Shown here: positions 3,917-57,934 of the stretch, piece after piece
How positions within the stretch are numbered: position 1 is the first letter of the stretch
How the letters are laid out: each line of letters begins with the position of its first letter
NCBI GenBank assembly: GCA_002269645.1
Contig: NIVC01000497.1
Span: 1-64,000, forward strand
From: Macrostomum lignano
Taxonomy: Eukaryota
Direction: 5' to 3'
DNA length: 64,000 nt
The notes under the pieces: generated by a model
Database searches by the model: none
Seen by the model: the letters and a program-made list of their open reading frames with translations, nothing else
Told to the model about the DNA's origin: nothing
Translations under genes and position numbers: made by a program

Positions 3917-4039
3917 CTGGAAATTACGTGTAAAAAAACACTTTAGTAGGATTCTTAGAAACTGAAAAGTAAATTCAACACATTCTAGAAACTAAAAAGT
4001 ACATTCTACAAACTGAGTCGAAAAGCATTATCTACACAC

Positions 4040-4270
4040 TATGCGACTATCAGATGAAAAGTACATTCTACATACCACAAGATAAAAGTACATTAATAGA
4101 TACCATCACTCTACACACTCATGAGATGAAAAGTACACTACAGTCTACATACTCCATGAGATTAAAAGTACACTCTCACTCTATAAGATGAAAAGTACAC
4201 TCTACACATTCTGAGATGAAAAGTACACTCTACACATTCTATGAGAGTAAAAAGTACATTCTACACATCC
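4040..4270. repeat. Degenerate ~30-bp repeat (GATGAAAAGTACACTCTACAC...)
   Basis: About 7 imperfect copies. Confidence 0.8.
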
Positions 4271-4408
4271 TATAAACTTCTTTATTCCCGCTGTTTGCTG
4301 CCTGGAGTTCAATCTGAAAGGCAAAATGATGATAAGAAATATTGAAATAATTTGAACCGATATCTAGTATAATGAGACATGTTTTCTCAAAACTGATCAA
4401 ACACGCAC

Positions 4409-4505
4409 TCAGAGAGCTGGGTTAATTTCAAATAAACCGCGAAAGCACAAAACACTTTTTTAAAGAATTTGCTACAATCCGGTCTCAAATGTTCAACTTC
4501 ATCAT
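4409..4505 (-). ncRNA. Box C/D snoRNA A1, predicted 28S Cm guide (SNORD35/snR69-type target)
   Basis: Minus strand ATGATGA...AACCCAGCTC-T-CTGA; guide complementary to 28S GAGCUGGGUU. Confidence 0.85.
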
Positions 4506-4693
4506 GTGTTTAGAACGTGAAATGCTTAATAACTAAATATATATAGATAGTTTCGTAATACTTACTTTATAACTTGGAACAGAAGACCGAAAATTTTACA
4601 AGGGAAATCTGAAATAACAAAATTTTTGACGAAAAGTTAAACATTCTAAGAAATCCAATAGGTCTTAAAATAATAATATAAAATCAAAGAGTC

Positions 4694-4795
4694 TCAGAGA
4701 GCTGGGGTTTAATTGCAATTTTTAGCTTTTGGATAAACAAATAGGCTTAATATTTGTCTAGCACTAAAGCAGTTCAAATGTTCAATTGTCATCAT
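4694..4795 (-). ncRNA. Box C/D snoRNA A2 (28S Cm guide family)
   Basis: ATGATGA...TTGAACATTTGA...CCCAGCTC-T-CTGA. Confidence 0.8.
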
Positions 4796-5442
4796 ATTGT
4801 TTTTGTGCAAAAGTAACGTTTTAAAGTGAATCGCACGACAGCCCCTGAACTATTCAATTTTCGTGCACAAACCGCAGGATGGGCCACTCAGCACATTTGC
4901 GTGCAAGCTACTTTCAGTTCAGTAGTAAGTAAGTAGTAAGTAGGAAGTTTATTGGCTCAGTCTTACCCCTCCTTAAGAGCGTAATCCTTCCAACGGCGCC
5001 TTTTCACACTAACCCCCCGCCCGCCCCAATTTTCATTGATTTCTCGGAATTCCAGCCTAAAGCTGCCATGTACATTCAGTAGACTGGCTAATGTACATTA
5101 TTGCTGAACCAATTAGCAAGCTTGTGGGCTTCTAATCTTATCGAAGTTATTTTAGCTGCCTTTATTTTTATAAAATAGCTTATGTATTCTTCTCTACTAC
5201 TGTAGTGAAAGTAGAAAGCTGTTTTGCTAAGCATTCAAGCGGCTTTTTGAATCTTCTTAATACCAAAAACATGGAGTTTTTACAGTATTAAATTACGAGC
5301 GTACTTTCCAAGTTATTAGTATGTCACTTACTTTAACTGTTGAGATCAGTTTCCATCTAAAATTGGATGTTAAAATTACTTGTTAAAAAACACAAACTTT
5401 GACGCGAAAAGATAAAAATAAAAATGAATGAGTAGACAATTT

Positions 5443-5514
5443 TCAGTCTCATTAAATCAGCTTTCGAATGATCATCAGAGATTAAATCACTCAACTATGT
5501 AAATCTTTCATCAT
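5443..5514 (-). ncRNA. Box C/D snoRNA B1, predicted 18S Am99/Am100 guide (SNORD57/snR51-type target)
   Basis: ATGATGA...AGCTGATTTAATGAG-A-CTGA; guide complementary to 18S CUCAUUAAAUCAG. Confidence 0.9.
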
Positions 5515-5708
5515 TTTCAACCATTTAATAACTCAATTTTTTTCATGATTAAAAAATCATTTTTTACTTACTGATATTATCTTTAAATTCCAATTTTCGA
5601 CTTCAGCTTCAATTAATTAGTTCTAAAAGAAATAAAGAAAAAATATCATGAGAAAATGTACGAGAAATGTAGATATTATTAAGTAATGTTATCGCAGAGT
5701 GCAAAATA

Positions 5709-5777
5709 TCAGTCTCATTAAATCAGCTTTAGTGTAAGGTCACGGTTGTGATCAAATATTTAATAAAGTATCATCAT
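5709..5777 (-). ncRNA. Box C/D snoRNA B2 (18S Am99/100 guide family)
   Basis: ATGATGA C box, invariant guide, CTGA D box. Confidence 0.9.
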
Positions 5778-5959
5778 ATTGATATTGGGTTTTGATATTT
5801 AAATAAATTATGAACTTACTTAATTGTTACAAGAGCAATCGAGAAACAAATAAGGCTCCATGTGCGATCTGAAAAATAAACAGCCCTGTGTATTTGGTAT
5901 ATCAAATTTAATTTAAGTATTTTAAATTATTTTAAAAGTTTTATAATACTGTATAATTC

Positions 5960-6044
5960 TCAGAGAGCTCGGGTTTATATCAAAGATAAAAGTACACCAT
6001 TCGCTTGTACGATGAACTTTAGTCAACTGTTCGATTTTCATCAT
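5960..6044 (-). ncRNA. Box C/D snoRNA A3 (28S Cm family, guide with a 1-nt interruption)
   Basis: ATGATGA...AAACCCGAGCTC-T-CTGA. Confidence 0.7.
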
Positions 6045-6254
6045 ATTTTTACGTTTAATGAAGTGAAAAATATATAACGAAATTAAACATGAATAAGAGC
6101 TATTGCTTACACTTTAGCCAATTTCCAATCAAATTTGAGTGTTTTCAGCAAGTCTAAAAAATAGAAATGTTTGTTTATTAAGATCAAATTATTTTGGTTA
6201 CGAAAAGTGCATGTAGCCAAATCAAAAGTACAAAAATATAAGTTCAACGAAAGT

Positions 6255-6322
6255 TCAGAGAGCTGGGGTTAATATCAAATAGTCGGATGGAATCCTGCAT
6301 TCAAATGTTCAAAGGTCATCAT
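6255..6322 (-). ncRNA. Box C/D snoRNA A4 (28S Cm family)
   Basis: ATGATGA...TTGAACATTTGA...CCCAGCTC-T-CTGA. Confidence 0.8.
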
Positions 6323-6519
6323 ATTTGGAAAAATATCGTAGTTAAAAATACAACGAAAAGTATGATCGAACTAACTACTTACAGTAGATCAAATTTATTG
6401 ACTTTCGCAGAATCTTCTCGAAATGAACACTGAGGTCTGCAATAGTAAAAAAAGGAATAGTTCAGTGGCAACGATATTAACAACTTCCAACTCCTAATCT
6501 AAGCTCGTATAAAGAATTG

Positions 6520-6583
6520 TCAGTCTCATTAAATCAGCTTTTGTGTTAATCACAAAAATATTCATGAAATATAAATTCATCCT
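6520..6583 (-). ncRNA. Box C/D snoRNA B3 (18S Am99/100 family, variant C box AGGATGA)
   Basis: Invariant guide and D box; C box has one mismatch. Confidence 0.8.
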
Positions 6584-6767
6584 AAAAATGTTTTAAAAAT
6601 AAAATGAGTACTACTATTTCACACTTGCATTCTTACCTAGTCGATGTCATGAACCATGGTAATTTTTTCTCGATTTCAATGCCTGCAAATGCAAAGGCGA
6701 GACTGTAATGCTCCAAATTTCAAATAGAACAAAATTCACATTCAAAAACCAAATATAAAATCACTAT

Positions 6768-6851
6768 TCAGAGAGCTGGGTGTTATTATCACTTAGAAAA
6801 CAATGAGCCACTAAAAGTGTCCATTGCTATCGAATGTTCGAATGTCATCAC
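6768..6851 (-). ncRNA. Box C/D snoRNA A5 (28S Cm family)
   Basis: GTGATGA...TCGAACATTCGA...ACCCAGCTC-T-CTGA. Confidence 0.8.
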
Positions 6852-7037
6852 TTTTAATACTGAACGGAGTACAGTAGCTTCCAAAAATAACACGGGGCAA
6901 GCTTACCATTGGCAATGAAATAGAAGTACTTCATCAACAAATCTAAAATTGGAACGAATTGCAGAGCTGTAGCGTAACAGCATGTGAATTTTGAATAAAT
7001 ACCTGCGAAAAAATTTTACGAACACAGAAATGCTATT

Positions 7038-7105
7038 TCAGTCTCATTAAATCAGCTTTGGATTGCAATCACATTGCGATCATTTATTGTTTAAAAATTC
7101 ATCAT
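7038..7105 (-). ncRNA. Box C/D snoRNA B4 (18S Am99/100 family)
   Basis: ATGATGA, invariant guide, CTGA. Confidence 0.9.
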
Positions 7106-7272
7106 CAGCAAATCTACGAGTACATTAAATTAAACTTTACCAGAAAAAAACGTATTAGAGTTTCAGATACGCAAAGGGAGAAATTAACCCCGTACGTATT
7201 ATGGGGAATGGAGGTTGTTGTCACTTTAAAACCAGTCACAAGCTATATGCGGATAAAGTAACGCTAGTGGGC

Positions 7273-7723
7273 TAGGGATTGCAATCCCGGGATCCCGGGA
7301 TTTGGGACCCCAAATCCCGAAACTAATTTTTGTTAATATTTTTTACAAAAAGTGCTGTAATATAAACATAATTAGGCCCACAATTAGTTTATTATACTGC
7401 GCTAATTTCCGTTAATTGCCTCACGTCGCGTGGCACCTTTTTAAACCCCGCATCATAGATTTAAATGTGAAATTAATTCCAATTTAAATTTTGATATAAT
7501 TTGCTTTTTTACTACTAATTAGTACATTTATACTACTTACTTTAATGGGTCACAAGATAATGCTGTTTATCATCTACAAATAGATCATTATCTCTATAAC
7601 AATAAAAAAGTAAGCAAAAAAGCGTTTAGCGCATATTTTGCCTTAAAATTTCAACCTAAAAGCATAAAAATCTGTATTATTCTGATCCCGGGATCATAAA
7701 AATCCGGGATTTTGCAATCCCTA
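7273..7723. mobile_element. Non-autonomous TIR element (MITE, possibly hAT-like) inside a snoRNA host intron
   Basis: TAGGGATTGCAA...TTGCAATCCCTA termini with subterminal ATCCCGGGAT palindromes and an AT-rich interior; TSD unclear. Confidence 0.7.
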
Positions 7724-8259
7724 GGGCACAAAATAACCTAAAAATGGGGTGGGGCTTGGCTTGGGGCGACCAACCAAAAAATCGATAACAACACTGACTC
7801 ACTCCGTGCCTTGGGGGCTGTTAGCTGGTGGGGCTAATGGTGGGGGCAGATAAGATAGGGAATTTGGTGGGGTAAGACGCCAGCGAGAAAATCGATAAAG
7901 CTCTCTTACCCATCCCGATTCCACACTCGCTTGCTACAGTAAAATGGGGTTAGCGGAGTGAGGTTGGGTTTAGATAGGGACGGTCGACCATAAAATCGAT
8001 AAATCTTTTACTCACTCACGACTCACAAGGCCTCAGTGGAAAACTGATGCAAAAAGTTAAATAATTAATAACACAGTTAATAGGAAATAAATTACACTTA
8101 CCCTATGACGTGCAATTTAAGCAGTAACTTGATCTTTTACACACAAACTGGTCTTAAAACTGCGACCTGTAACAAAAATAATGGCTGTGCATGAAATTTC
8201 GATTAGCTAATTTCATTAAAATAGGTGTATTAGTACTAGGTTGGGTTCTAAACATTGCT

Positions 8260-8354
8260 TCAGAGAGCTGGGTGTTAATATCAATTCGTAAAACTAATAA
8301 GCCACTTGTTAGGTGTTTATTAATAATTACGTTCTAATGTTCAAGTGTCATCAT
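8260..8354 (-). ncRNA. Box C/D snoRNA A6 (28S Cm family)
   Basis: ATGATGA...TTGAACAT...ACCCAGCTC-T-CTGA. Confidence 0.8.
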
Positions 8355-8554
8355 GTGCTTAAATATCAAACAGTAATTGCTACTGAAGAACAGTAATAAA
8401 AATGAAAAAACAAGCTTACCAGATATCAGTTCCATTACAGCCGAAATCCAATCCTGGAAAAATGAAATAAAATATAAAGCTATTGATTGTTTTAAGTAAA
8501 TGTAATTCAAGAAAATGAGTTCTGTTTGAACAAATAATTGCTACTGATAAGCAT

Positions 8555-8625
8555 TCAGTCTCATTAAATCAGCTTCAGGTTACACTCATAATATTTGAGG
8601 TCATTTATATAGAGATTGTCATCAA
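8555..8625 (-). ncRNA. Box C/D snoRNA B5 (18S Am99/100 family)
   Basis: TTGATGA C box, invariant guide, CTGA. Confidence 0.85.
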
Positions 8626-8822
8626 AGCTGTATTCATAAAATCCTTTGTTCTACTAAATTTAGTAACTAATAATGCAATTGACTTACCTATCTTCTTTAA
8701 CACATGAACCGATAATACACTGTAGAGGTCCTAAAACAAAAGGAGCAGGTTGATAGGAAGATCGATATTAAAAATAGAAGCTACAAACTATATTTATAAT
8801 AAAGTTTCCTGGCTCTAAATAT

Positions 8823-8896
8823 TCAGTCTCATTAAATCAGCTTTAGATTGCAAAAAGTCACGATTCTATTTTTGCATACAATAATTTTATCATCAT
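8823..8896 (-). ncRNA. Box C/D snoRNA B6 (18S Am99/100 family)
   Basis: ATGATGA, invariant guide, CTGA. Confidence 0.9.
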
Positions 8897-8963
8897 TAAT
8901 ATAGGCCAATAACTGTAACATTAAAAGTGGGAATATTAACAAACCTCATCTGGTATTGATAGT

Positions 8964-9061
8964 TCAGACGGTAATTCTTGTTTAATTTCAAGGTACTCAC
9001 GAGCAACTATAAACAAATATAGTCACTCTCTAGACTCAAATTAGACATTCGAGGTCATCAT
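8964..9061 (-). ncRNA. Box C/D snoRNA C1, predicted 18S Um guide (yeast U578/human U627; snR77/SNORD65-type target)
   Basis: ATGATGA...GAATTACCG-T-CTGA; 9-nt complement to 18S CGGUAAUUC; the D-5 position falls on the U of GCGGUAAUU. Confidence 0.65.
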
Positions 9062-9844
9062 TGATAAATCTCTTACTAATAAAAGTTTACATCTAAGCAT
9101 ACAAAACTACTCACAGTTTTAAACAGTCAATCGACGTCTTTTAGCAGCAGTAGACAGACAGATCCAGCCGGTTGAAATTAAACTAATTGAGTCACCATAG
9201 CTATAACAACTAAATACTGCACTGAATATTTCATGAAAAAAATAAATACAAGACTTGTACTACAATTTTAATTAAAAAATGTTTTTTGGTACTTAAATAC
9301 AATAAACTGTGTCAACACAGTAAAAAAAACTACAATAGGTTTGTAACAAACGAATAAAAGAGATATTTATTAAATACATATACAGACATTACAACTTACA
9401 AGTATCTGATATATAAAAAATGTTATGCGTCACAGCCAGTGGACACATGCTACCTATAAGTTCTCTTACTCTTAAGAACATTACCTAGAAAAAATGTAAG
9501 TACTTTAGTCTTGTAAAATGAAACAACACAAAAATAACAATGGACGGAATGGTGGAATGTCTAATGTATAAGATACTTCAAATTGTTTTTAAATACAGTT
9601 GAATTTAATATTCACAACTTAGGTTCGCAACGATTGATTCGGTGCTATAATCTAAAGATATCAGATATCTGCAGGTTTCTAACTAATCAGCTGCGCAAGA
9701 CAATACAATTTATTATGTACGAGTAATTCATGATATTTAGTCAGTTAACTATTTCGTTCTACAATCGATCAAATTTAAAACTTTTAATCTCGCAGCTCAA
9801 GCAACTGGAATTACTGGATATCTGGAAGGCTGTCCCACCAACTG

Positions 9845-10620
9845 AGGATCTGGGATGCTGGTCCAGAAAATGAGGATCTGGGATGCTGGTCCAGAAAATG
9901 AGGATCTGGGATGCTGGTCCAGAAAATGAGGATCTGGGATGCTGGTCCAGAAAATGAGGATCTGGGATGCTGGTCCAGAAAATGAGGATCTGGGATGCTG
10001 GTCCAGAAAATGAGGATCTGGGATGCTGGTCCAGAAAATGAGGATCTGGGATGCTGGTCCAGAAAATGAGGATCTGGGATGCTGGTCCAGAAAATGAGGA
10101 TCTGGGATGCTGGTCCAGAAAATGAGGATCTGGGATGCTGGTCCAGAAAATGAGGATCTGGGATGCTGGTCCAGAAAATGAGGATCTGGGATGCTGGTCC
10201 AGAAAATGAGGATCTGGGATGCTGGTCCAGAAAATGAGGATCTGGGATGCTGGTCCAGAAAATGAGGATCTGGGATGCTGGTCCAGAAAATGAGGATCTG
10301 GGATGCTGGTCCAGAAAATGAGGATCTGGGATGCTGGTCCAGAAAATGAGGATCTGGGATGCTGGTCCAGAAAATGAGGATCTGGGATGCTGGTCCAGAA
10401 AATGAGGATCTGGGATGCTGGTCCAGAAAATGAGGATCTGGGATGCTGGTCCAGAAAATGAGGATCTGGGATGCTGGTCCAGAAAATGAGGATCTGGGAT
10501 GCTGGTCCAGAAAATTAGGATCTGGGATGCTGGTCCAGAAAAAGAGGATCTGGTGGCTGGCCCAGCAACTGAGGATCTGGGAGGCTAGTCCAGAAAATGA
10601 GGATCTGGTGGCTGACCCAG
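9845..10620. repeat. 28-bp minisatellite (GAGGATCTGGGATGCTGGTCCAGAAAAT)n
   Basis: About 25 near-identical copies. Confidence 0.97.
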
Positions 10621-10765
10621 CCGCTGAGGATCTGCAAGATATCAGATATCAGATAGGTGGTTCAACAATTTCAGAATTCAGAATAACTCTGATTAAAAAC
10701 CGAAATAGAACAAAACTCAATATTTTAATTAAAAGCAGTCATAATTAGCACAGTAAAGAAGTCAA

Positions 10766-11479
10766 TCAAGCAATGGTGGTTTGGCCGGCGTTCCTCCTTC
10801 GCAACTCGGTACCCTCGAAGGCATTGTTATAATAGACGTAGCCGTCTTCCCTGGACTCGCCAGACTGATCCAATCCGTCAGCATTGAAATACTCCATCTT
10901 GTGGTGAAACTTCAATGCCTGAACAGTTTGAAACACTTTGATAGTGTACAGGCCCATGATCACTTCTAGCAGTACGAATATGAATTCCACAGAGTGCATG
11001 ACGATCTCGAAGGGATTCACCAGCAGATAATAGTTGAATAGAAAGAAGCAGATAGCTGGCAGCTGTATAATAGTCGTGATAAGCCAACTACCGGCTAAAT
11101 CGGCAATATTCTCCGACAGATTGCCGAAGTAGCCAATGTAAAGCCGGATGAATTCCAGGATGCAATACAAGCAGAACAGGGCGATCAATATTGGCTGATA
11201 GATGTAATTCAGCTGGCTGTACTTGTCAACTATGGACAATAGGAAGCCGACAATCCAGAATGGAGCAAAGAATGCGTTGAAATAATACACAATCTGCAAT
11301 GGCAGGAAGGTGGCGTACTCAAGCCCTGTGCGGCCAGTCTGTAAGCGGATCTTCTCCAAGTCCTGCTTGCGAACTGGGAACATTTGATTGGTCATGCGGC
11401 CCATTGCTGACCGCCAGGTGCCTTGCAGGCGTTGCACAGCCTGGCTGGCTTGCTGCTGCATGCTGTTCATTGTGTTCAT
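10766..11479 (-). CDS. TMEM17: Transmembrane protein 17 (ciliary transition zone, TMEM17/216 family), single coding exon, 237 aa
   Basis: LPLQIVYYFNAFFAPFW...IRLYIGYFGNLSENIADLAGSWLITTIIQLP matches the TMEM17 motif RLYLGYxGNLxExVxxLAGFW; four hydrophobic segments. Confidence 0.9.
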   Translation of the reverse strand: MNTMNSMQQQASQAVQRLQGTWRSAMGRMTNQMFPVRKQDLEKIRLQTGRTGLEYATFLPLQIVYYFNAFFAPFWIVGFLLSIVDKYSQLNYIYQPILIALFCLYCILEFIRLYIGYFGNLSENIADLAGSWLITTIIQLPAICFFLFNYYLLVNPFEIVMHSVEFIFVLLEVIMGLYTIKVFQTVQALKFHHKMEYFNADGLDQSGESREDGYVYYNNAFEGTELRRRNAGQTTIA

Positions 11480-11599
11480 TTGGTCTGCTTGGGTTTCTGG
11501 CGATGCTGCTGTCTAGCGATATCACTGCTTGTCTGCTTCAGTTGTTCGAGCGTAGGCATGAAAAATCATATAAATCACTATTCAGCTGTAACTGCCTGG

Positions 11600-12320
11600 A
11601 ATCTGGGAGCCCAGAAACTGGGGATCTGGGAGGCTGGCCCAGCAACTGAGGATCTGGGAGGCTGGCATAGCAACTGAGGATCTGGGAGGCTGGCCCAGCA
11701 ACTGAGGATCTGGGAGGCTGGCCCAGCAACTGAGGATCTGGGAGGCTGGCCCAACAACTGAGGATCTGGGAGGCTGGCCCAGCAACTGAGGATCTGGGAG
11801 GCTGGCCCAGCAACTGAGGATCTGGGAGGCTGGCCCAGCAACTGAGGATCTGGGAGGCTGGCCCAGCAACTGAGGATCTGGGAGGCTGGCACAGAAACCG
11901 GGGATCTGGGAGGCTGGCATAGCAACTGAGGATCTGGGAGGCTGGCCCAGCAACTGAGGATCTGGGAGGCTGGCCCAGCAACTGAGGATCTGGGAGGCTG
12001 GCCCAACAACTGAGGATCTGGGAGGCTGGCCCAGCAACTGAGGATCTGGGAGGCTGGCCCAGAAACCGGGGATCTGGGAGGCTGGCCCAGCAACTGAGGA
12101 TCTGGGAGGCTGGCCCAGCAACTGAGGATCTGGGAGGCTGGCATAGCAACTGAGGATCTGGGAGGCTGGCATAGCAACTGAGGATCTGGGAGGCTGGCCC
12201 AGCAACTGAGGATCTGGGAGGCTGGCACAGAAACCGGGGATCTGGGAGGCTGGCCCAGCAACTGAGGATCTGGGAGGCTGGCCCAGCAACTGAGGATCTG
12301 GAGGCTGGCCCAGCAAGAGT
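11600..12320. repeat. 28-bp minisatellite (GAGGATCTGGGAGGCTGGCCCAGCAACT)n
   Basis: About 25 copies, homologous to the 9845-10620 array. Confidence 0.97.
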
Positions 12321-13024
12321 AATACTAAAGCTTTCACTAAAGCTAAATTTCGAAAGAACCATAACTAGCAGCGCTTTGATATGTTTTGTCTAAAAATATA
12401 ACAAAACTGAAAATAAAATCTAGAAAGCAACATATTTATTGTGTGTGAATGGTGAACTAGAACACCGGCCGTGCGCAGCTAACAAAGCTTTTGAGTAGAT
12501 TGCTGAATAACGGAAAAATTGCTGTTTGAGTAAATAACAGCCATATAAACACGTCTGACAAGTTAACGGTTAATTATCAAGGACAACAAAAAATTCTAGA
12601 ACAAAATACATAAAAGGTTTCAAAGATGCAAACAAAAATTTTGTAGTAAAAAAGAAAAATTTGACAGAAATTACAAACTTTAAGCTGACAAATCCAGGAT
12701 AATATAGCGCATAAACTATGTACTAACCATGAAGGGACTACGAGCCTGACTCTAGTCGTGTTCGCAACAAGGTACAATTAGTATTGATAATAAGCAGGAT
12801 TTGAAATCCAACAGTGCCTAATATACAGACTTAACACGACGTATTGGAGTGTTGTACATCGAGTTCGAATTGAAAATCTACTAATGTACGCATGCTGCGT
12901 TAGCTAAGGTTAGCTCAATAAATATACAGCATACGTGTAGGAGCTGTTTTGATCTATTTTAGCTCACTCAGGGCCGCTACACCAAAGAAAGACAGGTGGT
13001 GAAAAAATGACTTTTAAGAACTGG

Positions 13025-13026
13025 GG

Positions 13027-13071
<45 letters not shown>

Positions 13072-13132
13072 GGCAGACAGACAGACAGACAGGCACACAC
13101 TAAAACACTGAGACAGCCAGACAGACAGCCAG

Positions 13133-13187
<55 letters not shown>

Positions 13188-13216
13188 GGCACACACTAAA
13201 ACACTGAGACAGCCAG

Positions 13217-13291
<75 letters not shown>

Positions 13292-13523
13292 GCCAGACAG
13301 ACAGGCAGACAGCCAGACAGCCAGACAGACAGACAGACAGACAGACAGCCAGACAGACAAGCAGAGAGACAGACAGACAGCCAGACAGACAGACAGCAGG
13401 CAGACACTAAAACACTAAGACAGCCAGACAGACAGACGGACAGACAGACAGCCAGACAGACAGGCAGACAGACAGACAGACAGGCACACACTAAAACACT
13501 GAGACAGCCAGACAGACAGCCAG

Positions 13524-13586
<63 letters not shown>

Positions 13587-13831
13587 GCCAGACAGACAGG
13601 CAGACAGCCAGACAGCCAGACAGACAGACAGACAGACAGCCAGACAGACAAGCAGACAGACAGACAGACAGCCAGACAGACAGACAGCAGGCAGACACTA
13701 AAACACTAAGACAGACAGACAGACAGACGGACAGACAGACAGCCAGACAGACAGCCAGACAGACAGCCAGACAGACAGCCAGACAGACAGACAGACAGAC
13801 AGCAGGCAGACACTAAAACACTAAGACAGCC

Positions 13832-13876
<45 letters not shown>

Positions 13877-13930
13877 GGCAGACAGACAGACAGACAGACA
13901 GGCAGACAGGCAGACAGCCAGACAGCAGGC
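13025..13930. repeat. (GACA)n compound microsatellite
   Basis: Direct observation. Confidence 0.97.
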
Positions 13931-13938
13931 AGGCGATC

Positions 13939-16900
13939 CTACAGGCCCTGACTCTTATCCGTGGCGCAGCGAAGCACCGCGGCCTGGCCTCGATGAGCCA
14001 CAGTAAAAGTGCACGGACCCTGAAGCCAGGGCTCACCATCCACCTGCACCGGGACGCTGCCGGACCGCAGTACAATCTGCAGATTCGAACCCTGGCCCAG
14101 CCGTATAGCCGGGGCTAATCCCAACTGCAGCTGGGCCATGTGGAAGCTGGAATGCAGCCCCATCAATTCGAATCGGCCGTCGCCGTGCGATTGCGGCCGG
14201 AAATGCAGCTGAGCATCCGGCTGAGCCGCCGAGGAGGCTGGACTCGACATCTTCGCAGACGAGGAATCGTCCGACACGGTCGGAGAAGCCGACGATCCCC
14301 AAGGTCTGCAGCCGGAGCCCCAGGAGGCGATGTTCAGCACGACCAGGCCTTCCAATTCTGGCAGGTTCAATGGTCGGCCGTCGAGAATCACGGTCAATCG
14401 GCGGTGCAGATAGCGGCAGACGCGCTCCCATAGGTCTCGGGTGCCGTAGCCAAAATACCTGGGGATAATTTAAATAGACTACTATTAGTTAGATACAGTC
14501 ACTCGTTAGTCAGTTAGATAAACACAAGCATTAGTGAATTAGATAGACAATCATTAGTCAATTAGATACAGTCACTCATTAGTCAGTTAGATAAACACAA
14601 ACATTAGTGAATTAGATAGACAATCATTAGTCAATTAGATACAGTCACTCATTAGTCAGTTATACTTAGACACTCATTAGTCAATTAAGTACACGCATTG
14701 GTCAATTAGATAAAGACAATCATTAGTGAATTAGATGGACAATCATTAGTGAATTAGATGGACAATCATTAGTGAATTAGATGGACAATCATTAGTGAAT
14801 TAGATGGACAATCATTAGTGAATTAGAATATTAGATGGACAATCATTAGTGAATTAGATAAAGACAATCATTAGTGAATTAGATGGACAATCATTAGTGA
14901 ATTAGATGGACAATCATTAGTGAATTAGATGGACAATTATTAGTGAATTAGATGGACAATCATTTGTGAATTAGATGGACAATCATTAGTGAATTAGATG
15001 GACAATCATTAGTGAATTAGATGGACAATCATTAGTGAATTAGATGGACAATCATTAGTGAATTAGATGGACAATTATTTGTGAATTAGATGGACAATCA
15101 TTTGTGAATTAGATGGACAATCATTAGTGAATTAGATGGACAATCATTAGTGAATTAGATGGACAATCATTTGTGAATTAGATGGACAATCATTAGTGAA
15201 GTAGATACAGACAATCATTAGTGAAGTAGATACAGACAATCATTAGTGAAGTAGATACAGACAATCATTAGTGAAGTAGATACAGACAATCATTAGTGAA
15301 GTAGATACAGACAATCATTAGTGAAGTAGATACAGACAATCATTAGTGAATTAGATGGACAATCATTTGTGAATTAGATGGACAATCATTAGTGAAGTAG
15401 ATACAGACAATCATTAGTGAAGTAGATACAGACAATCATTAGTTAGTTAGATACAGTTACTCATTAGCCAATTGGATACAATCAATCATTAGCCAATTAG
15501 ACGCAGGCACTCATTAGACACATACAGTCACCTATTAGTCAATTAGATACAGTTAATGTCTCACCAAAGCTTATTAATCATCCGACTACCAGTTAGCGCA
15601 GGCAGCGATCGCCTGGCGGAGTCGAAATTCAAGGCAACCAGAGCGTCAACTCCTAGACTGAAGTAATTACTCATAGTAAGCCGTTTCGATCGAGACAACA
15701 GCAGCGATCGGCTGGGCTTCACAGATACAAGCCAACGATCTAATCGATCTACGCTAGCGTTAGCCAAGTTGCTTAACAACGCATCGACGCTATCTAGGTC
15801 GTCGGCGCTCGAACCCGGTCCCCAGCCTAGCACGCGGGACAGATCGTTGCCGGTGCCCAGCGGGAAAATTGCTAACGGAGGCGGCGGACTCAATCCCAGC
15901 TCTTCGATGGCGGACAGCACCCAGCCGACGGTGCCGTCGCCGCCGCACACAAGCAGCCGAGCTGTGACACCTTTGGGTAGGAGGCGGCACCAGCCCAGGG
16001 CCACTTTGGGCGGCACTTCGGACAGGTCCAGCACCTGCGAGAGAAGGTAAGTTTAGAGATTGATTATCATTGTTCAGGGAAATGAAGGACAGTGCTTTAT
16101 AGTGACATGCTTCAGGGCGATTATTCCTGGAAATTGAAGGCCGATTCTTTATGGAATTGAAGACCGACTCTTAATGAAATGATGGAATTAAGGCCGATTC
16201 TTGATAGAATTCACGGTTGATTCTTGGTGGAATTGAAGGCCGATTCATGATGGAATTAAAGGCCGATCTTTGAGGGAATTGAAGGCCGATTCTTGATGGA
16301 ATTGAAGGCCGATTTTTTATGGAATTGAAGGCTGATTCTTTATGGAATTGAAGGCTGATTCTTGATGGAATTAAAGGCCGAATCTTGATGGAATTGACGG
16401 CCGATTCTTGATCGAATTAAAGGCCGATTTCTGACTGAAGGCCGATTCTTGATGGAATTGAAGGCCGATTCTTGATGGAATCGAAGGCAGATTCTTGATG
16501 GAATTGAAGGCCGATTCTTGATAGAATTCAAGGCCGATTCTTGGTGGAATTGAAGGCCGATTCATGATGGAATTAAAGGCCGATCCTTGAGGGAATTGAA
16601 GGCCGATTCTTGATGGAATTGAAGGCCGATTCTTGATAGAATTCACGGTTGATTCTTGGTGGAATCGAAGGCAGATTCTTGATGGAATTGAAGGCCGATT
16701 CTTGATAGAATTCAAGGCCGATTCTTGGTGGAATTGAAGGCCGATTCATGATGGAATTAAAGGCCGATCCTTGAGGGAATTGAAGGCCGATTCTTGATGG
16801 AATTGAAGACCGATTCTTGATAGAATTCACGGTTGATTCTTGGTGGAATCGAAGGCAGATTCTTGATGGAATTGAAGGCCGATTCTTGATAGAATTCAAG

Positions 16901-19515
16901 GCCGATTCTTGGTGGAATTGAAGGCCGATTCATGATGGAATTAAAGGCCGATCCTTGAGGGAATTGAAGGCCGATTCTTGATGGAATTGAAGGCCGATTT
17001 TTTATGGAATTGAAGGCTGATTCTTTATGGAATTGAAGGCTGATTCTTGATGGAATTAAAGGCCGAATCTTGATGGAATTGACGGCCGATTCTTGATCGA
17101 ATTAAAGGCCGATTTCTGACTGAAGGCCGATTCTTGATGGAATTGAAGGCCGATTCTTAATGGAATCGAAGGCAGATTCTTGATGGAATTGAAGGCCGAT
17201 TCTTGATAGAATTCAAGGCCGATTCTTGGTGGAATTGAAGGCCGATTCATGATGGAATTAAAGGCCGATCCTTGAGGGAATTGAAGGCCGATTCTTGATG
17301 GAATTGAAGGCCGATTCTTGATGGAATTGAAGGCCGATTCTTGATGGAATTGAAGGCCGATTCTTAATAGAATTCAAGGCCGATTCTTGGTGGAATTGAA
17401 GGCCGATTCATGATGGAATTAAAGGCCGATTCTTGATGGAATTGAAGGCCGATTCTTGATGGAATTGAAGGCCGATTCTTGATGGAATTGAAGGCCGATT
17501 CTTAATAGAATTCAAGGCCGATTCTTGGTGGAATTGAAGGCCGATTCATGATGGAATTAAAGGCCGATCCTTGAGGGAATTGAAGGCCGATTCTTGATGC
17601 AATTGAAGGCCGATTCTTGATGGAATCGAAGGCCGATTCTTGATGGAATTGAAGGCCGATTCTTGATAGAATTCAAGGCCGATTCTTGGTGGAATTGAAG
17701 GCCGATTTATGATGGAATTAAAGGCCGATCCTTGAGGGAATTGAAGGCCGATTCTTGATGGAATTGAAGGCCGATTTTTTATGGAATTGAAGGCTGATTC
17801 TTGATGGAATTAAAGGCCGATTCTTGATGGAATTGACGGCCGATTCTTGATCGAATTAAAGGCCGGTTTCTGACTGAAGGCCGATTCTTGATGGAATTGA
17901 AGGCCGATTCTTGATGGAATCGAAGGCCGATTCTTGATGGAATTGAAGGCCGATTTTTTATGGAATTGAAGGCCGATTTCTGACTGAAGGCCGATTCTTG
18001 ATGGAATTGAAGGCCGATTCTTGATGGAATTGAAGGCCGATTCTTGATGGAATTAAAGGCCGATTCTTGATGGAATTCAAGGCCGATTCTTGATGGAATT
18101 GAAGGCCGATTTCTGACTGAAGGCCGATTCTTGATGGAATTAAAGGCCGATTTCTGACTGAAGGCCGATTCTTGATGGAATTGAAGGCCGATTTTTTAGG
18201 AAATTTTAAAGCGATTTTATCGGTCTTAAAGGGTGGTGTTTTAAGAATTTTTTTAATCCCTAATTGGCAATTTGTAAGTAAAAAAATCAGGTAGCAACAA
18301 TCCAGTTGGCCGGAGCCTCTCACCTGAGCTGGGTTCAGCACCGCTCGGAATCGCTGCAGCACTTGGTCACCTTCACCACCGCCGCTGTGCCGATTGGCCA
18401 GCACAATCAGGGGCCGCCAAACGGCGGGCAGCCGGGGAGCCCGCACCATCGACAGCAGACTGGGCTGCCGACGGCGCGTCGGCTTCGACAGTTGCACGCA
18501 GTGCGGCGGCACCACCGCATCGGCGTAGCGACCGAAATCGCACAGCCTTGGAAGCTGGCGCCGCTGCGAAGGGTCAGCATTGTTGATTTTGTTGGCTTCG
18601 CCGCCTTCTCTTGTAGAAGTACTGGGAATGCGAATTTAAATGTCATATTACTTAAAAAAGCTAATTTTTTAGACTACTAATAGTAGAAATTAGTGCAGGA
18701 TTGAATTTTTCGCTTGGCGCTACCCGACTTAAACGCTAACGAGACCAAGAAGCGACCCAGAGTCACTTGCGTTGCCCACGGAGTCGTTGCAGGTAACACA
18801 GGTAAAATATAAAAAATTGACTCTCTAAAACACTCTAGACGGCTCTAAAACGAGATGTCACGGTGAGGGCCCAAAAAAGTCGTCAAAGAGTTGCCAAAAG
18901 AGTCGCTAGTGAGTTGTTTGCAATCACGGTTTCCTTCTCTTCCTACTGTACTTTAAAACAGTTGTCCTTGGGCCTCACTCACGCTCCATTGGCAGTCAAT
19001 TCGGCGCAGTCTGGATGCACGCAGCGCTGGCACCAGGCGCACCGCAGGTCGCACAATCGGCCAGCTTCGCCGCAGGCATCACGACAGACGCAGCACATTG
19101 AATAGGCTGGCAGATTGCCTTCAACCCAATGATGCGGTGTGCCTTCTATGTCAGCATCCGATGATGGCGAGGATGACGAAGGTATCAAAGCGACAGGCTT
19201 GCAGGGCACAGCGCGGACTGCAACGGACAGTTCCGAATCGGAAACGCACAAGCCGCAGTGTTGACAGACGGCGCCTTCGAGCATAGCGGCTCCGCCGGAG
19301 ACTCCACAATAGGCTGGCCGATCGAAGTGACCGATTCGACGCCACCGGTGGCCGTTGTTGCTAGGAGCGGCGCCGTCATCCGGGGCCGGCACACTGGGAT
19401 CCGGTAGGCGACGGTGCCGCAGCTTTCTCAGGTAGATTAATAAGTAGGTGAGCAATAGAAGGCCGGCAGCGTATAGTGCCTGCCACGCCCAGTGGGGGGC
19501 CTGCAATAGAGTCAT
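13939..19515 (-). CDS. DGKE: Diacylglycerol kinase epsilon-like; exons 18983-19515, 18324-18546, 15565-16034, 13939-14458
   Basis: N-terminal TM segment, two C1 domains (HHWVEGNLP...C..C...CAWCQRCVHPDC), catalytic NRHSGGGEG, CGGDGTVGWV and PLGTGNDLSRVLGWG, and accessory LPELEGLVVLNIASWGSGCRPW...VPVQVDGEPW. GT-AG junctions are phase-consistent. Confidence 0.93.
14480..15550. repeat. 23-bp minisatellite (TTAGTGAATTAGATGGACAATCA)n, DGKE intron
   Basis: Direct observation. Confidence 0.95.
16130..18200. repeat. 23-bp minisatellite (GGAATTGAAGGCCGATTCTTGAT)n with higher-order variant blocks, DGKE intron
   Basis: About 85 copies; variant patterns recur. Confidence 0.97.
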
Positions 19516-19544
19516 GAGAAGCGACTGCACTAAGATATAACTGA

Positions 19545-20340
19545 CCTAGGCGCTGGATTGGACTGTCTATGGCTGGCCTGGGTGCTGCATTGGACTGTCT
19601 ATGGCTGGCCTGGGTGCTGCATTGGACTATCTATAGCTGGCCTGGGTGCTGGATTGGACTGTCTATGGCTGGCCTGGGTGCTGCATTGGACTGTCTATGG
19701 CTGGCCTGGGTGCTGCATTGGACTATCTATAGCTGGCCTGGGTGCTGGATTGGACTGTCTATGGCTGGCCTGGGTGCTGGATTGGACTGTCTATGGCTGG
19801 CCTGGGTGCTGGATTGGACTGTCTATGGCTGGCCTGGGTGCTGCATTGGACTGTCTATGGCTGGCCTGGGTGCTGCATTGGACTGTCTATGGCTGGCCTG
19901 GGTGCTGCATTGGACTGTCTATGGCTGGCCTGGGTGCTGCATTGGACTGTCTATGGCTGGCCTGGGTGCTGCATTGGACTGTCTATGGCTGGCCTGGGTG
20001 CTGCATTGGACTGTCTATGGCTGGCCTGGGTGCTGCATTGGACTGTCTATGGCTGGCCTGGGTGCTGCATTGGACTGTCTATGGCTGGCCTGGGTGCTGC
20101 ATTGGACTGTCTATGGCTGGCCTGGGTGCTGCATTGGACTGTCTATGGCTGGCCTGGGTGCTGCATTGGACTGTCTATGGCTGGCCTGGGTGCTGCATTG
20201 GACTGTCTATGGCTGGCCTGGGTGCTGCATTGGACTGTCTATGGCTGGCCTGGGTGCTGCATTGGACTGTCTATGGCTGGCCTGGGTGCTACATTGGACT
20301 GTCTATGGCTGGCCTGGGTGCTGCATTGGACTGTCTATGG
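19545..20340. repeat. 32-bp minisatellite (GGCTGGCCTGGGTGCTGCATTGGACTGTCTAT)n immediately 5' of the DGKE ATG
   Basis: About 25 copies. Confidence 0.97.
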
Positions 20341-20935
20341 ATTTATGGATTTATACATGTTTAATTTCGAGAAAATGACGACAACAGTTTAAAAGCAAAC
20401 GAATAAATATCACGTATATTTTAGGATTAAAAAATTCTGAATAATTATTAGAATAAAATAAATACCAGCCGTACAACAAAACTTCAAATTTGTCTGCTTT
20501 CTTAATTCAAATAATAATTCTTAGATTCCGAACAGCAGCGATAAAAAACTGTGTCAGTAACTGGATAAATATCTAAACCAAAGAATTGTCGAATTGAATA
20601 CCAACTGAAAATAAAAACTCAATAATTTACAGGAATAACTGTGTAAGCTTCAATGTATTAATAAGAAGCTTTATTGTCTGCATATTGTATTGCAAGGCAT
20701 CGATAGCACATTAATTGTCATTAATCGGATGCAAATAATAAAACTGCGTTACAACAAAATCGATCGGTAATAAAAGTTATAAACCATATTCTAAGTAGTA
20801 GAGAAAGCATATTTATGCCTACTGTTTTCAAACTACCCTACTATTAGTACAAAAAACGAATCGTAACCGTAATTTTCTGTTGTTTTGTTATTTTTGAAAA
20901 AATTCAACTTCTTTTAAATATTTCCTGATTTCTCC

Positions 20936-57184: not shown

Positions 57185-57860
<676 letters not shown>

Positions 57861-57934
57861 CTCAATTGAGTCATCCCCCTAAAAGAAGGACAAGCAGCAC
57901 CCGGTTGCCGGGCCGCGCTCTCACGCGGAGTTTA

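What the first reader, a model, noticed from the sequence alone, without database searches (positions are those of the whole stretch)
4409..9061. Unannotated cluster of 13 box C/D snoRNAs built from two amplified guide families plus a singleton
Seen: two interspersed motifs recur on the plus strand, TCAGTCTCATTAAATCAGCTT (6 copies) and TCAGAGAGCT(C)GGG (6 copies). Each is followed 60-100 nt later by TCATCAT or a one-mismatch variant. On the minus strand each unit reads RTGATGA ... guide ... CTGA, 64-102 nt long. The guides and boxes are conserved while the rest of each copy has diverged, the pattern expected from selection on RNA guides. Established: these guides complement universal rRNA segments (18S CUCAUUAAAUCAG; 28S GAGCUGGGUU), and the D-5 rule lands on known 2'-O-methyl sites (yeast 18S A100/human A99, snR51/SNORD57; yeast 25S C2948, snR69/human SNORD35 target; numbering from memory). 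Inference: six-fold redundancy for each of two sites, interleaved as A A B B A A B A B A B B C, is unusual and implies repeated intron-unit duplication.
Basis: partly seen in the sequence, partly recalled or inferred. Interest (0 to 1): 0.92.

Follow-up and report, generated by a model that had tools for sequence, protein, structure and literature searches.

The report
Flatworm snoRNA host gene, 13 guides
This stretch of the flatworm Macrostomum lignano genome is a non-coding "host" gene whose introns carry 13 small guide RNAs for ribosomal RNA methylation; the RNAs are real-looking and apparently unannotated, but fruit flies and mammals have the same kind of gene.

Summary
There are six exact copies of each motif, with none expected by chance. 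On the minus strand every copy is the 3' end (guide plus D box CUGA) of a 64-102 nt unit that starts with a C box.

The window is Macrostomum lignano contig NIVC01000497.1. The 13 units sit in 12 predicted short introns of a multi-exon gene with no usable reading frame, a UHG/GAS5-like snoRNA host gene. Eleven introns carry one unit; the first carries two.

- Family A (6 copies) carries the SNORD57/snR51 guide for 18S Am99/100, pairing over 15-17 bp.
- Family B (6 copies) carries the yeast snR69 guide core CCCAGCUCU for LSU Cm2948.
- The singleton fits snR77/SNORD65 (18S Um578/627) with only 9 bp, a weaker assignment.

A paralogous locus that is 88-91% identical holds all 13 units in the same order. 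Substitutions are 2.5% in units against 5.7% in the rest of the introns.

The redundancy is also not very unusual, because fly Uhg genes host several copies per guide.

Expression, methylation and the host's own rRNA sequence were not tested. Verdict: new members of a known kind, modest interest.

The parts
8964..9061 (-). Unit C (singleton), 98 nt. C box AUGAUGA 9061-9055. D guide GAAUUACCG(U) followed by D box CUGA 8967-8964.
   Evidence: The guide makes 9 Watson-Crick bp with 18S GCGG[U]AAUUC in 4 rDNAs. Against L001 there is 1 substitution and a 6-nt indel, both outside the boxes and guide.
8823..8896 (-). Unit A6, 74 nt, SNORD57-like. Shares intron 1 with unit C.
   Evidence: (RF00274, 22.4 bits).
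8555..8625 (-). Unit A5, 71 nt. C box is UUGAUGA. Its L001 counterpart has lost the D box through an 8-nt deletion.
8260..8354 (-). Unit B6, 95 nt, snR69-like. Guide ACCCAGCUCU followed by CUGA.
7038..7105 (-). Unit A4, 68 nt, SNORD57-like.
   Evidence: (26.9 bits).
6768..6851 (-). Unit B5, 84 nt. C box GUGAUGA.
6520..6583 (-). Unit A3, 64 nt. Variant C box AGGAUGA.
   Evidence: (27.5 bits). It is 100% identical to its L001 counterpart.
6255..6322 (-). Unit B4, 68 nt.
5960..6044 (-). Unit B3, 85 nt. The guide has a G at position 7 (CCCGAGCUCU) that breaks the pairing; L001 keeps the C.
5709..5777 (-). Unit A2, 69 nt, the best SNORD57 match. Its D' region CCGUGACCUU resembles the SNORD57 consensus CCUGACCUU.
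   Evidence: 28.0 bits, E=0.013.
5443..5514 (-). Unit A1, 72 nt.
4694..4795 (-). Unit B2, 102 nt.
4409..4505 (-). Unit B1, 97 nt. It has the longest B guide, 10 bp (AACCCAGCUC).
9115..9150 (-). 3' part of predicted exon 1. The 5' end and transcription start were not determined. The donor GTGAGT starts at 9114.
   Evidence: This rests on a motif only.
8688..8730 (-). Predicted exon 2 (43 nt).
   Evidence: polypyrimidine-AG acceptor and GTAAGT donor. 100% identical in L001.
8420..8453 (-). Predicted exon 3 (34 nt).
8102..8166 (-). Predicted exon 4 (65 nt).
   Evidence: 100% identical in L001.
6907..6942 (-). Predicted exon 5 (36 nt).
   Evidence: Differs from L001 by a 3-nt indel and 5 substitutions.
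6637..6682 (-). Predicted exon 6 (46 nt).
   Evidence: L001 has a 13-nt insertion here.
6383..6436 (-). Predicted exon 7 (54 nt).
6111..6153 (-). Predicted exon 8 (43 nt).
5820..5868 (-). Predicted exon 9 (49 nt).
5572..5622 (-). Predicted exon 10 (51 nt).
5332..5356 (-). Predicted exon 11 (25 nt).
4566..4608 (-). Predicted exon 12 (43 nt).
4265..4313 (-). Predicted last exon, with AATAAA at 4286-4281. The 3' end is approximate.
   Evidence: 100% identical in L001.
7267..7729 (.). MITE-like insertion in intron 4, with 18-nt terminal inverted repeats. It is absent from the paralogous locus and is not part of the snoRNA system.

Best explanation
The region is a non-protein-coding, multi-exon snoRNA host gene on the minus strand of Macrostomum lignano. 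It is of the UHG/GAS5/Drosophila-Uhg kind.

Inferred mechanism: Pol II transcribes about 5 kb. Splicing joins 13 tiny exons (25-65 nt) into a roughly 570-nt RNA with no usable ORF. From each excised intron, box C/D core proteins (Snu13, Nop56, Nop58, fibrillarin) assemble on the C/D motif, and exonucleases trim the intron down to a 64-102 nt snoRNA.

Six snoRNAs (family A) are SNORD57/snR51-type guides for 2'-O-methylation of 18S A99/A100. Six (family B) are snR69/snoR69Y/fly-CD3-type guides for the LSU C equivalent to yeast C2948 in helix 90. They also carry a conserved second element that probably makes accessory pairing with the neighbouring A loop. One (unit C) is most likely an snR77/SNORD65-type guide for 18S U578/U627.

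The array grew by duplication of intron-exon modules, long before the whole locus was duplicated in this polyploid genome. A few copies are now decaying.

Shown here: motifs, architecture, complementarity to eukaryotic rDNA, conservation in the paralog. Inferred: transcription, splicing, snoRNP assembly, methylation.
For: **Boxes and copy number**
- Six plus six exact motif copies, with 0 expected by chance.
- C box present in 13/13 units (11 canonical) and D box in 13/13.
- Invariant alignment columns are confined to the boxes and guides.

**Family A**
- All six copies hit Rfam SNORD57. The hits are below threshold, but the guide is identical to the family consensus.
- The guide pairs over 15-17 bp at 18S position 98-100 in four real rDNA units; 0 of 300 shuffles reach this.

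**Family B**
- The guide pairs over 8-10 Watson-Crick bp at GAG[C]UGGGUU. That sequence is invariant in 16/16 LSU sequences.
- Counting from the A-loop G2922 in my recalled yeast 25S sequence puts that C at C2948, 26 nt 3' of G2922. This numbering is recalled, not tool-verified.
- The published yeast snR69 probe shows the same guide core, CCCAGCUCU, directly followed by a box.
- snR69 guides Cm2948.
- By position, the site corresponds to fly Cm3480: fly Am3478, Cm3480 and Cm3491 are spaced like yeast A2946, C2948 and C2959. Cm3480 is guided by four copies, CD3a-d. This mapping is my inference.
- UGUUCA, the complement of B's invariant 5' element, occurs only 1-3 times per rDNA unit. One occurrence lies 24 nt 5' of the target, against 0.013-0.028 expected.
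- Yeast snR69 is reported to have extra base-pairing adjacent to a D/D' box.

**Unit C**
- 9 Watson-Crick bp on a universally methylated site.

**Host gene**
- 12 introns with GTAAG/GTGAG donors and polypyrimidine-AG acceptors.
- The C box starts 42-66 nt after the 5' splice site in 10/13 units.
- The D box ends 83-101 nt before the 3' splice site in 12/13 units.
- The spliced RNA has stops in all frames, and there is no ORF of 90 aa or more in 3947-10442.
- Exon indels against the paralog are not multiples of three.

**Paralogous locus L001**
- It keeps all 13 units in the same order.
- Substitutions are 2.5% in units against 5.7% in the rest of the introns, Fisher P=1.4e-5.
- None falls in a C- or D-box core, and only one falls in a guide core.

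**Other**
- Module duplication is visible.
- A mini-snoscan of all 64 kb returns essentially only this cluster.
Against: - There is no expression, snoRNP or methylation data.
- The M. lignano rRNA sequence itself was not available. Complementarity was tested only on other eukaryotes' rDNA.
- No unit reaches any Rfam gathering score. Families B and C match no family at all.
- Terminal stems are no better than chance (mean 3.6 against 3.25 bp, P=0.19).
- By complementarity alone, the B and C guides are not statistically unusual. Shuffled guides do as well in 6-11% of trials for B and 17% for C. Those target assignments therefore lean on landing on known methylation sites. Unit C has a competing site, GUGG[U]AAUUCU.
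- Exons were predicted from splice motifs only, and the transcription start is undefined.
- Long stretches identical between the two loci (208 and 138 nt) could reflect gene conversion, which would inflate the apparent constraint.
- Three copies have defects: the A3 C box, the A5 C box and the B3 guide.
Confidence: 0.85

Rival explanations
1. Partly dead array. The locus is a snoRNA host gene, but only some of the 13 copies yield working snoRNAs. The others are redundant copies drifting into pseudogenes. This refines the best explanation and is compatible with it.
For: - A3 has AGGAUGA and A5 has UUGAUGA as C box.
- The L001 counterpart of A5 lost its D box by an 8-nt deletion.
- B3 carries a guide substitution that breaks the pairing, while L001 keeps the intact base.
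- B-guide length varies from 8 to 10 bp.
Against: - Ten of 13 copies have canonical boxes and intact guides.
- All copies kept their guide and D box, although everything else has diverged to about 60% identity. Long-dead copies would not show this.
Confidence: 0.4
2. The cluster is not an independent gene. It would be the 3' continuation of the upstream TMEM17 transcription unit on the same strand (ORF 10766-11479), as a long 3' UTR with introns or as a downstream cistron of a trans-spliced operon.
For: - It has the same orientation and lies only about 1.6 kb downstream of the TMEM17 stop.
- The same neighbourhood is kept in the paralog.
- No promoter or start site could be defined.
Against: - A minisatellite of roughly 0.8 kb and AT-rich spacer lie between them.
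- There is an ATTAAA shortly after the TMEM17 stop (read).
- Blocks conserved between the paralogs at 9467-9411 and 9265-9213, upstream of exon 1, look like promoter-proximal sequence.
Confidence: 0.08
3. An orphan or regulatory snoRNA array, like the imprinted SNORD115/116 clusters. The many copies would act on mRNAs or other non-rRNA targets, not on rRNA.
For: - The arrangement is a multi-copy tandem array in a non-coding host.
- The D' element of family B and the D' guide of unit C have no established rRNA methylation target.
Against: The invariant guides match rRNA at methylation sites known from yeast, fly, plants or human. SNORD115/116 have no such rRNA complementarity (from general knowledge).
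Confidence: 0.03
4. A repeat or transposon-derived array with chance resemblance to snoRNAs and no RNA function.
For: - The genome is very rich in minisatellites and TEs.
- Terminal stems are not significant.
Against: - Copies share only the boxes and guides, not a repeat body.
- Each copy sits at a fixed position in its own intron.
- The 21-nt A motif equals the SNORD57 guide.
- There is a selective deficit of substitutions in the units.
Confidence: 0.02

Closest known systems
Drosophila Uhg (U snoRNA host gene) lncRNAs, e.g. the host(s) of snoRNA:CD3a-d, CD2a-d and CD5a-c
   Same: - They are spliced, non-translated multi-exon genes whose introns are processed into box C/D snoRNAs.
- Eight Uhgs give more than 50 C/D snoRNAs (PMC3396368).
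- Guides come in several lettered copies, including four copies (CD3a-d) for the fly site I take to be the family B target, Cm3480 (PMC11014333). The equivalence is my positional inference.
   Different: - Here there are six copies of each of two guides, against up to four in the fly table.
- There are only three specificities in 13 units.
- The 18S A99/100 guide has no counterpart in the fly Nm table.
- CD3 is listed for both Am3478 and Cm3480, whereas family B fits only the C.
- No sequence homology was tested. That the interleaved multi-copy families share one fly host gene is from my memory of Tycowski & Steitz 2001, not from a tool.
Mammalian non-coding snoRNA host genes (UHG/SNHG1, GAS5)
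   Same: A multi-exon gene with no conserved ORF and generally one C/D snoRNA per intron. The snoRNA lies at a constrained distance upstream of the 3' splice site, which fits splicing-dependent processing (general knowledge; PMC2780460 notes the distance constraint).
   Different: - GAS5 and SNHG1 carry different snoRNAs, not repeated copies of the same guide.
- A 5'TOP start could not be checked here.
- Here the distance to the 3' splice site is 83-101 nt.
Human SNORD57 (Rfam RF00274) / yeast snR51
   Same: The D-box guide CUGAUUUAAUGAG is identical to the SNORD57 consensus and points to 18S A99/A100 by the D+5 rule. In A2 the D' region CCGUGACCUU resembles the consensus CCUGACCUU.
   Different: - Scores are 21-28 bits against a gathering score of 47, so it is not a formal Rfam member.
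- The rest of the RNA is unrelated.
- The guide extends to AAGCUGAUUUAAUGAG, which implies a host 18S reading ...AAUCAGCU. That is seen in 3 of 33 surveyed 18S sequences.
Yeast snR69 / plant snoR69Y
   Same: - The same antisense core, CCCAGCUCU, abuts a box.
- The target is the C of GAG[C]UGGG, which is 25S C2948.
- There is a further conserved element next to a D/D' box. This is the layout reported as the one exception for snR69's extra base-pairing.
   Different: - In N. crassa the guide is listed next to D', and the box that follows the core in the yeast snR69 probe reads UCGA; here the guide is next to the terminal D box.
- No Rfam hit.
- The site has no human guide.
- Which rRNA segment yeast snR69 uses for its extra pairing was not seen.
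Yeast snR77 / human SNORD65 (HBII-135)
   Same: Unit C's D guide GAAUUACCG pairs with 18S GCGG[U]AAUUC. That is Um578 in yeast and Um586 in fly and Um627 in human (recalled numbering).
   Different: - Only 9 bp.
- A second site, GUGG[U]AAUUCU, fits about as well.
- Shuffled guides reach this score 17% of the time.
- No Rfam match.
Imprinted SNORD115/SNORD116 tandem arrays
   Same: Many near-identical C/D snoRNA copies, each in an intron of a repeated unit of a non-coding host.
   Different: Those are orphans with dozens of copies and no rRNA complementarity (general knowledge). Here the guides match canonical rRNA sites.

Membership tests
Box C/D snoRNA (class) | C box RUGAUGA near the 5' end | tested here: met
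   Eleven of 13 are exact. A3 is AGGAUGA and A5 is UUGAUGA.
Box C/D snoRNA (class) | D box CUGA at the 3' end | tested here: met
   13/13 in the window; 12/13 in paralog L001.
Box C/D snoRNA (class) | Antisense element directly 5' of D or D' that pairs with rRNA and puts a methylatable nucleotide opposite position 5 | tested here: met
   Family A pairs over 15-17 bp, B over 8-10 bp and C over 9 bp on four metagenomic eukaryotic rDNA units. Only A is significant on complementarity alone. The host's own rRNA was not available.
Box C/D snoRNA (class) | Short terminal stem bringing the C and D boxes together | tested here: inconclusive
   The best flank helix averages 3.6 bp, against 3.25 for random flanks (P=0.19).
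Box C/D snoRNA (class) | Internal D' and C' boxes | tested here: met
   Family B has UNGA after the 5' element and UGAUA (UGAAA or UGCAA in two copies) before the D guide. In family A and unit C they are degenerate or only putative.
Box C/D snoRNA (class) | Accumulates as a stable 60-100 nt RNA bound by fibrillarin, Nop56, Nop58 and Snu13 | not testable with these tools
   No expression data were accessible.
SNORD57 (Rfam RF00274) | Covariance-model score at or above the gathering score (47 bits) | tested here: not met
   21.3-28.0 bits, E 0.013-0.9.
SNORD57 / snR51 (functional group) | D-box guide for 18S A99/A100 | tested here: met
   The guide is identical to the Rfam consensus. D+5 lands on 18S position 98-100. 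snR51 guides Am100.
snR69 / snoR69Y (functional group) | Guide CCCAGCUCU next to a box, targeting the LSU C equivalent to yeast C2948 | tested here: met
   The target GUGAGCUGGGUUUAGA is invariant in 16/16 LSUs. The site number C2948 comes from counting in my recalled yeast 25S sequence.
snR69 / snoR69Y (functional group) | Sequence homology to known members | tested here: not met
   No Rfam match for B4, only generic C/D hits with E of about 1 or more. Only one B copy was scanned in this sensitive mode.
snR77 / SNORD65 (functional group) | Guide for 18S U578/U627 | tested here: inconclusive
   9 Watson-Crick bp at the site, but there is a competing site and 17% of shuffles do as well. No Rfam match.
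Non-coding snoRNA host gene (UHG/GAS5/Uhg type) | Multi-exon gene with snoRNAs in introns, usually one per intron | tested here: met
   12 predicted introns: 11 with one unit and intron 1 with two. Prediction is from splice motifs and their regular spacing only.
Non-coding snoRNA host gene (UHG/GAS5/Uhg type) | No conserved protein-coding frame in the spliced exons | tested here: met
   Stops in all frames, and a longest ORF of about 50 codons that crosses exons with 3-nt and 13-nt indels in the paralog. No ORF of 90 aa or more.
Non-coding snoRNA host gene (UHG/GAS5/Uhg type) | 5'TOP-type start, and a spliced polyadenylated short-lived RNA | not testable with these tools
   The start site is undefined. 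An AATAAA is present in the last exon (4286-4281).

The most novel reading that the evidence does not exclude
Family B would be a two-handed guide. Besides directing Cm at the C2948-equivalent, its invariant D'-adjacent element UYGAACAK would clamp the ribosomal A loop (UGUUCA, 24 nt upstream), or even direct a lineage-specific methylation there (the U two nucleotides 3' of the conserved Gm). The twelve-plus copies per guide in the genome (six in each of at least two loci) would then be kept by dosage selection, to drive otherwise sub-stoichiometric sites such as 18S A100 to full methylation in this highly regenerative animal.
Probability: 0.15. Interest if true: 0.45.

Novelty: new member of a known kind. 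Interest (0 to 1): 0.27.

Why it matters
- **Flatworm annotation.** Flatworm snoRNAs are almost unannotated. A homology survey of Schistosoma found no unambiguous homologue of any known snoRNA except U3 (PMC2770079). No paper in the searched library that mentions both M. lignano and snoRNA deals with snoRNA annotation. This locus gives three clean, target-assigned guide families and a host-gene model for a regeneration model organism. It also provides seed sequences for annotating the rest of the phylum.
- **Evolution of methylation sites.** The snR69-type site, lost in vertebrates, appears to be kept in a flatworm. The SNORD57-type site is absent from the fly methylation table but has a guide here.
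- **Limits.** The gene architecture and the mechanism are textbook, so nothing here changes how snoRNAs are understood.

Tried and rejected
- **Rfam at gathering thresholds over the whole window:** nothing.
- **Sensitive Rfam scans of a B unit and the C unit:** only generic C/D noise.
- **A D'-guided target for family B:** candidates were 18S GUGU[U]CAAAG, LSU CUGU[U]UAAUU and 18S GGGU[U]CGAUU. None fits all copies, none is significant, and the 18S site is variable among eukaryotes. I dropped these in favour of accessory pairing with the A loop.
- **A D' target for unit C:** 18S CUUA[G]AUGU, 13 pairs with 3 G-U and 1 mismatch. It is not significant and not a known site.
- **Terminal stems:** not above chance.
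- **A 5-nt micro-exon between unit C and A6:** rejected, because there is no room for a branch site. The two units share intron 1.
- **The 50-codon ORF in the spliced RNA:** rejected as coding because of frame-breaking indels in the paralog.
- **A weak extra candidate at 24439 (-):** it matches one rDNA only and is probably chance.
- **Supplementary tables of the fly paper:** not held.

Full report
**1.

The 21-mer TCAGTCTCATTAAATCAGCTT occurs six times without a mismatch, at + starts 5443, 5709, 6520, 7038, 8555 and 8823. TCAGAGAGCTSGGG occurs six times with at most one mismatch, at 4409, 4694, 5960, 6255, 6768 and 8260. For both, zero matches were expected in shuffled sequence, and neither occurs elsewhere in the 64 kb.

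Read on the minus strand, each motif is an antisense element followed by CUGA. A C box lies 64-102 nt upstream. Eleven are canonical RUGAUGA; A3 has AGGAUGA and A5 has UUGAUGA. A thirteenth unit runs from 9061 to 8964 (AUGAUGA ... GAAUUACCGU-CUGA).

Alignments of the six copies of each family show that the invariant columns are confined to the C box, the guide and the D box. Family B adds a short 5' element with a D'-like box, and a C'-like box. Everything else has diverged.

**2. Where the sequence comes from**

The neighbouring ORF at 10766-11479 (-) is a TMEM17 protein, 98% identical to a Macrostomum lignano protein. The window's own copy lies on NIVC01000497.1 of assembly GCA_002269645.1. 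A paralogous copy lies on NIVC01000137.1 and was fetched as L001. The organism is therefore a free-living flatworm. M. lignano is known, from general knowledge, for a duplicated genome.

**3. Anatomy of the host gene**

No ORF of 90 aa or more exists on either strand between 3947 and 10442.

On the minus strand, every gap between units holds a polypyrimidine-AG acceptor and a GTAAG donor. These bracket a 25-65 nt segment. With a GTGAGT donor at 9114, this gives 13 exons and 12 introns.

The geometry is strikingly regular:
- Typical introns are 197-253 nt.
- The C box starts 42-66 nt after the 5' splice site in 10 of 13 units.
- The D box ends 83-101 nt before the 3' splice site in 12 of 13 units.

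The exceptions:
- Two introns are enlarged by inserted, TE-like sequence. One of them contains a MITE with 18-nt inverted repeats at 7267-7729 that is absent from the paralog.
- Intron 1 carries two units, C and A6, only 67 nt apart.

The last exon has an AATAAA at 4286-4281. The spliced RNA is about 570 nt and has stops in all frames. Its longest ORF, about 50 codons, crosses exons that differ from the paralog by 3-nt and 13-nt indels.

This is the architecture of a non-coding snoRNA host gene. It rests on motifs, spacing and conservation, not on RNA data. The 5' end is not defined.

**4. Comparative evidence from the paralog**

L001 is collinear with the window at 88-91% identity and carries all 13 units in the same order. 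The amplification therefore predates the duplication of the locus.

Substitution rates against L001:

| Region | Substitutions |
|---|---|
| 13 units | 2.5% |
| Predicted exons | 3.8% |
| Remaining intron sequence | 5.7% |

The difference between units and remaining intron is significant (Fisher P=1.4e-5).

Inside the units, no difference touches a C- or D-box core, apart from a purine swap at the first C-box position of B5. Only one touches a guide core, in B3.

Signs of relaxed constraint on individual copies exist:
- The L001 counterpart of A5 lost its D box by an 8-nt deletion.
- The window's B3 has a G that breaks the guide, where L001 keeps the C.

One caution: identical runs of 208 and 138 nt may reflect gene conversion.

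Within the locus, a 356-nt module [A5-exon3-B6] aligns at 60% identity with [A4-exon5-B5], and [exon7-B4] aligns with [exon8-B3]. This is direct evidence that intron-exon modules were duplicated, and that this happened long ago.

**5. Targets**

I obtained real eukaryotic rDNA from metagenome contigs. Four contigs hold complete 18S-to-LSU units.

*Family A.* The guide pairs over 15-17 bp with 18S, and D+5 falls on position 98-100. No shuffled guide does as well, 0 of 300. All six copies hit Rfam SNORD57 below threshold (21-28 bits against 47), with the guide identical to the family consensus. Yeast Am100 is guided by snR51 (PMC5699541).

*Family B.* The guide pairs over 8-10 Watson-Crick bp with GAG[C]UGGGUU, which is invariant in 16 of 16 LSUs. 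Counting from the A-loop G2922 in my recalled yeast 25S sequence places this C at C2948.
- The published northern probe for yeast snR69 shows that snR69 contains the same core, CCCAGCUCU, directly followed by a box. snR69 guides Cm2948, and snR73 guides Cm2959.
- The N. crassa comparison table lists snR69 / snoR69Y and no human guide for that site. It lists U35 for the snR73 site (PMC2780460).
- The fly map lists Am3478, Cm3480 and Cm3491, spaced like yeast A2946, C2948 and C2959, so I take Cm3480 as the equivalent. It is labelled 'DmYADd' (fly, yeast, Arabidopsis, Dictyostelium; not human or Xenopus) and is assigned to four copies, snoRNA:CD3a-d (PMC11014333).
- By complementarity alone the B match is not rare; shuffles reach it 6-11% of the time. 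The assignment rests on landing exactly on this known site and on identity with the snR69 guide core.

*Unit C.* The guide makes 9 Watson-Crick bp with 18S GCGG[U]AAUUC. This is yeast Um578/snR77 and fly Um586, with HBII-135 as the human guide. In human numbering it is U627, by a recalled 18S sequence whose numbering I checked against 27 recalled sites. A second site, GUGG[U]AAUUCU, fits about equally well, and shuffles reach the score 17% of the time. This assignment is only probable.

**6. The second conserved element of family B**

All six B copies keep U-Y-GAACA-K followed by UNGA directly after the C box. I found no convincing D'+5 target for it.

Its complement, UGUUCA, is rare, occurring 1-3 times per rDNA unit. 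One occurrence is the invariant A loop GGAUUGUUCACCC, 24 nt 5' of the family B target. Uniform placement would give 0.013-0.028 such occurrences.

van Nues et al. 2011 describe 'extra base-pairing' next to methylation sites. They name snR69 among the snoRNAs that have it, and call it the one exception in which the element lies adjacent to a D or D' box (PMC3116282).

I therefore favour accessory pairing with the A loop. This is inference.

**7. What argues against, or is missing**

- No unit reaches an Rfam gathering score.
- Families B and C match no family.
- Terminal stems are not better than chance.
- The host's own rRNA, expression and methylation were not testable.
- A mini-snoscan over the whole window returns essentially only this cluster, so the signal is specific to it.

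**8. Comparison with what is known, and novelty**

Non-coding multi-exon host genes with one C/D snoRNA per intron are classical (UHG, GAS5). In Drosophila, eight Uhg genes yield more than 50 C/D snoRNAs (PMC3396368). 42% of the C/D snoRNAs that are hosted inside other genes lie in Uhg lncRNAs, and many guides exist as two to four lettered copies (PMC11014333).

Six copies of each of two guides, and at least twice that in the genome, is at the high end. It is not a new principle.

Flatworm snoRNAs are very poorly annotated (PMC2770079). These are therefore new members of a known kind, useful for annotation and for tracing the gain and loss of methylation sites. Interest is modest.

Noticed in passing
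window 7267-7729: A MITE-like element of about 460 nt sits inside intron 4 of the host gene. It has 18-nt terminal inverted repeats (GGGCTAGGGATTGCAA...) and internal CCCGGGAT palindromes. It is absent from the paralogous locus L001, so it inserted after the loci diverged.
   Followed up: partly
window 7730-8060 and 7150-7272; 4800-5330: G+C-richer blocks inside introns 4 and 11 are conserved in L001 and make these two introns 1159 and 723 nt long instead of about 200-250. They are probably older transposon fragments. No Rfam hit; they were not checked for H/ACA features.
   Followed up: no
window 9411-9467 and 9213-9265: Two blocks upstream of predicted exon 1 are 100% identical between the paralogs (56 and 53 nt). 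The first contains TGACGCA and runs into a T/A-rich TATA-like stretch. They may be promoter elements of the host gene; the start site is undetermined.
   Followed up: no
window 8688-8730, 8102-8166, 4265-4313: Host-gene exons 2, 4 and 13 are 100% identical between the two loci, better conserved than the snoRNAs themselves. This may hint at exon function, splicing signals or gene conversion.
   Followed up: no
L001 12253-12300 (counterpart of window 8555-8625): The paralog's copy of unit A5 has an 8-nt deletion that removes the D box. This is a snoRNA copy caught dying.
   Followed up: yes
window 9820-10640: A 28-nt minisatellite (about 29 copies of ...CAGCATCCCAGATCCTCATTTTCTGGAC...) lies between TMEM17 and the host gene. 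Related repeats lie upstream of TMEM17 in L001. The whole window is unusually rich in minisatellites that give long spurious ORFs, e.g. 11538-12362, 12964-13698, 19558-20392, 31896-32669, 39370-40118, 55959-56640, 57131-57874 and 60937-61967.
   Followed up: no
window 4001-10000: The host-gene region has 32-35% G+C, against 44-54% in most of the window.
   Followed up: no
window 10766-11479 (-); about 13900-19530 (-); 52511-54738 (-); 40908-41237 (-): Neighbouring genes are TMEM17 (Pfam PF09799) and a diacylglycerol kinase (PF00781/PF00609). ORF fragments at 52511-54738 look like adenosine deaminase, and 40908-41237 looks like a mariner-type transposase remnant; the last two are read from the translations only.
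   Followed up: partly
window about 24439 (-): A CUGA preceded by GUUUAAUCAC, with a C-box-like motif upstream, matches a 10-mer of only one of the four rDNA units. It is probably chance.
   Followed up: no
window 9040-9054 (unit C, 5' half): The putative D' guide of unit C (ACCUCGAAUGUCUAAU followed by UUGA) pairs with the universal 18S segment CUUA[G]AUGUYC, making 10 Watson-Crick and 3 G-U pairs with 1 mismatch. That is G1507 in recalled human numbering, not a known methylation site, and the match is not significant against shuffles (6-10%).
   Followed up: partly
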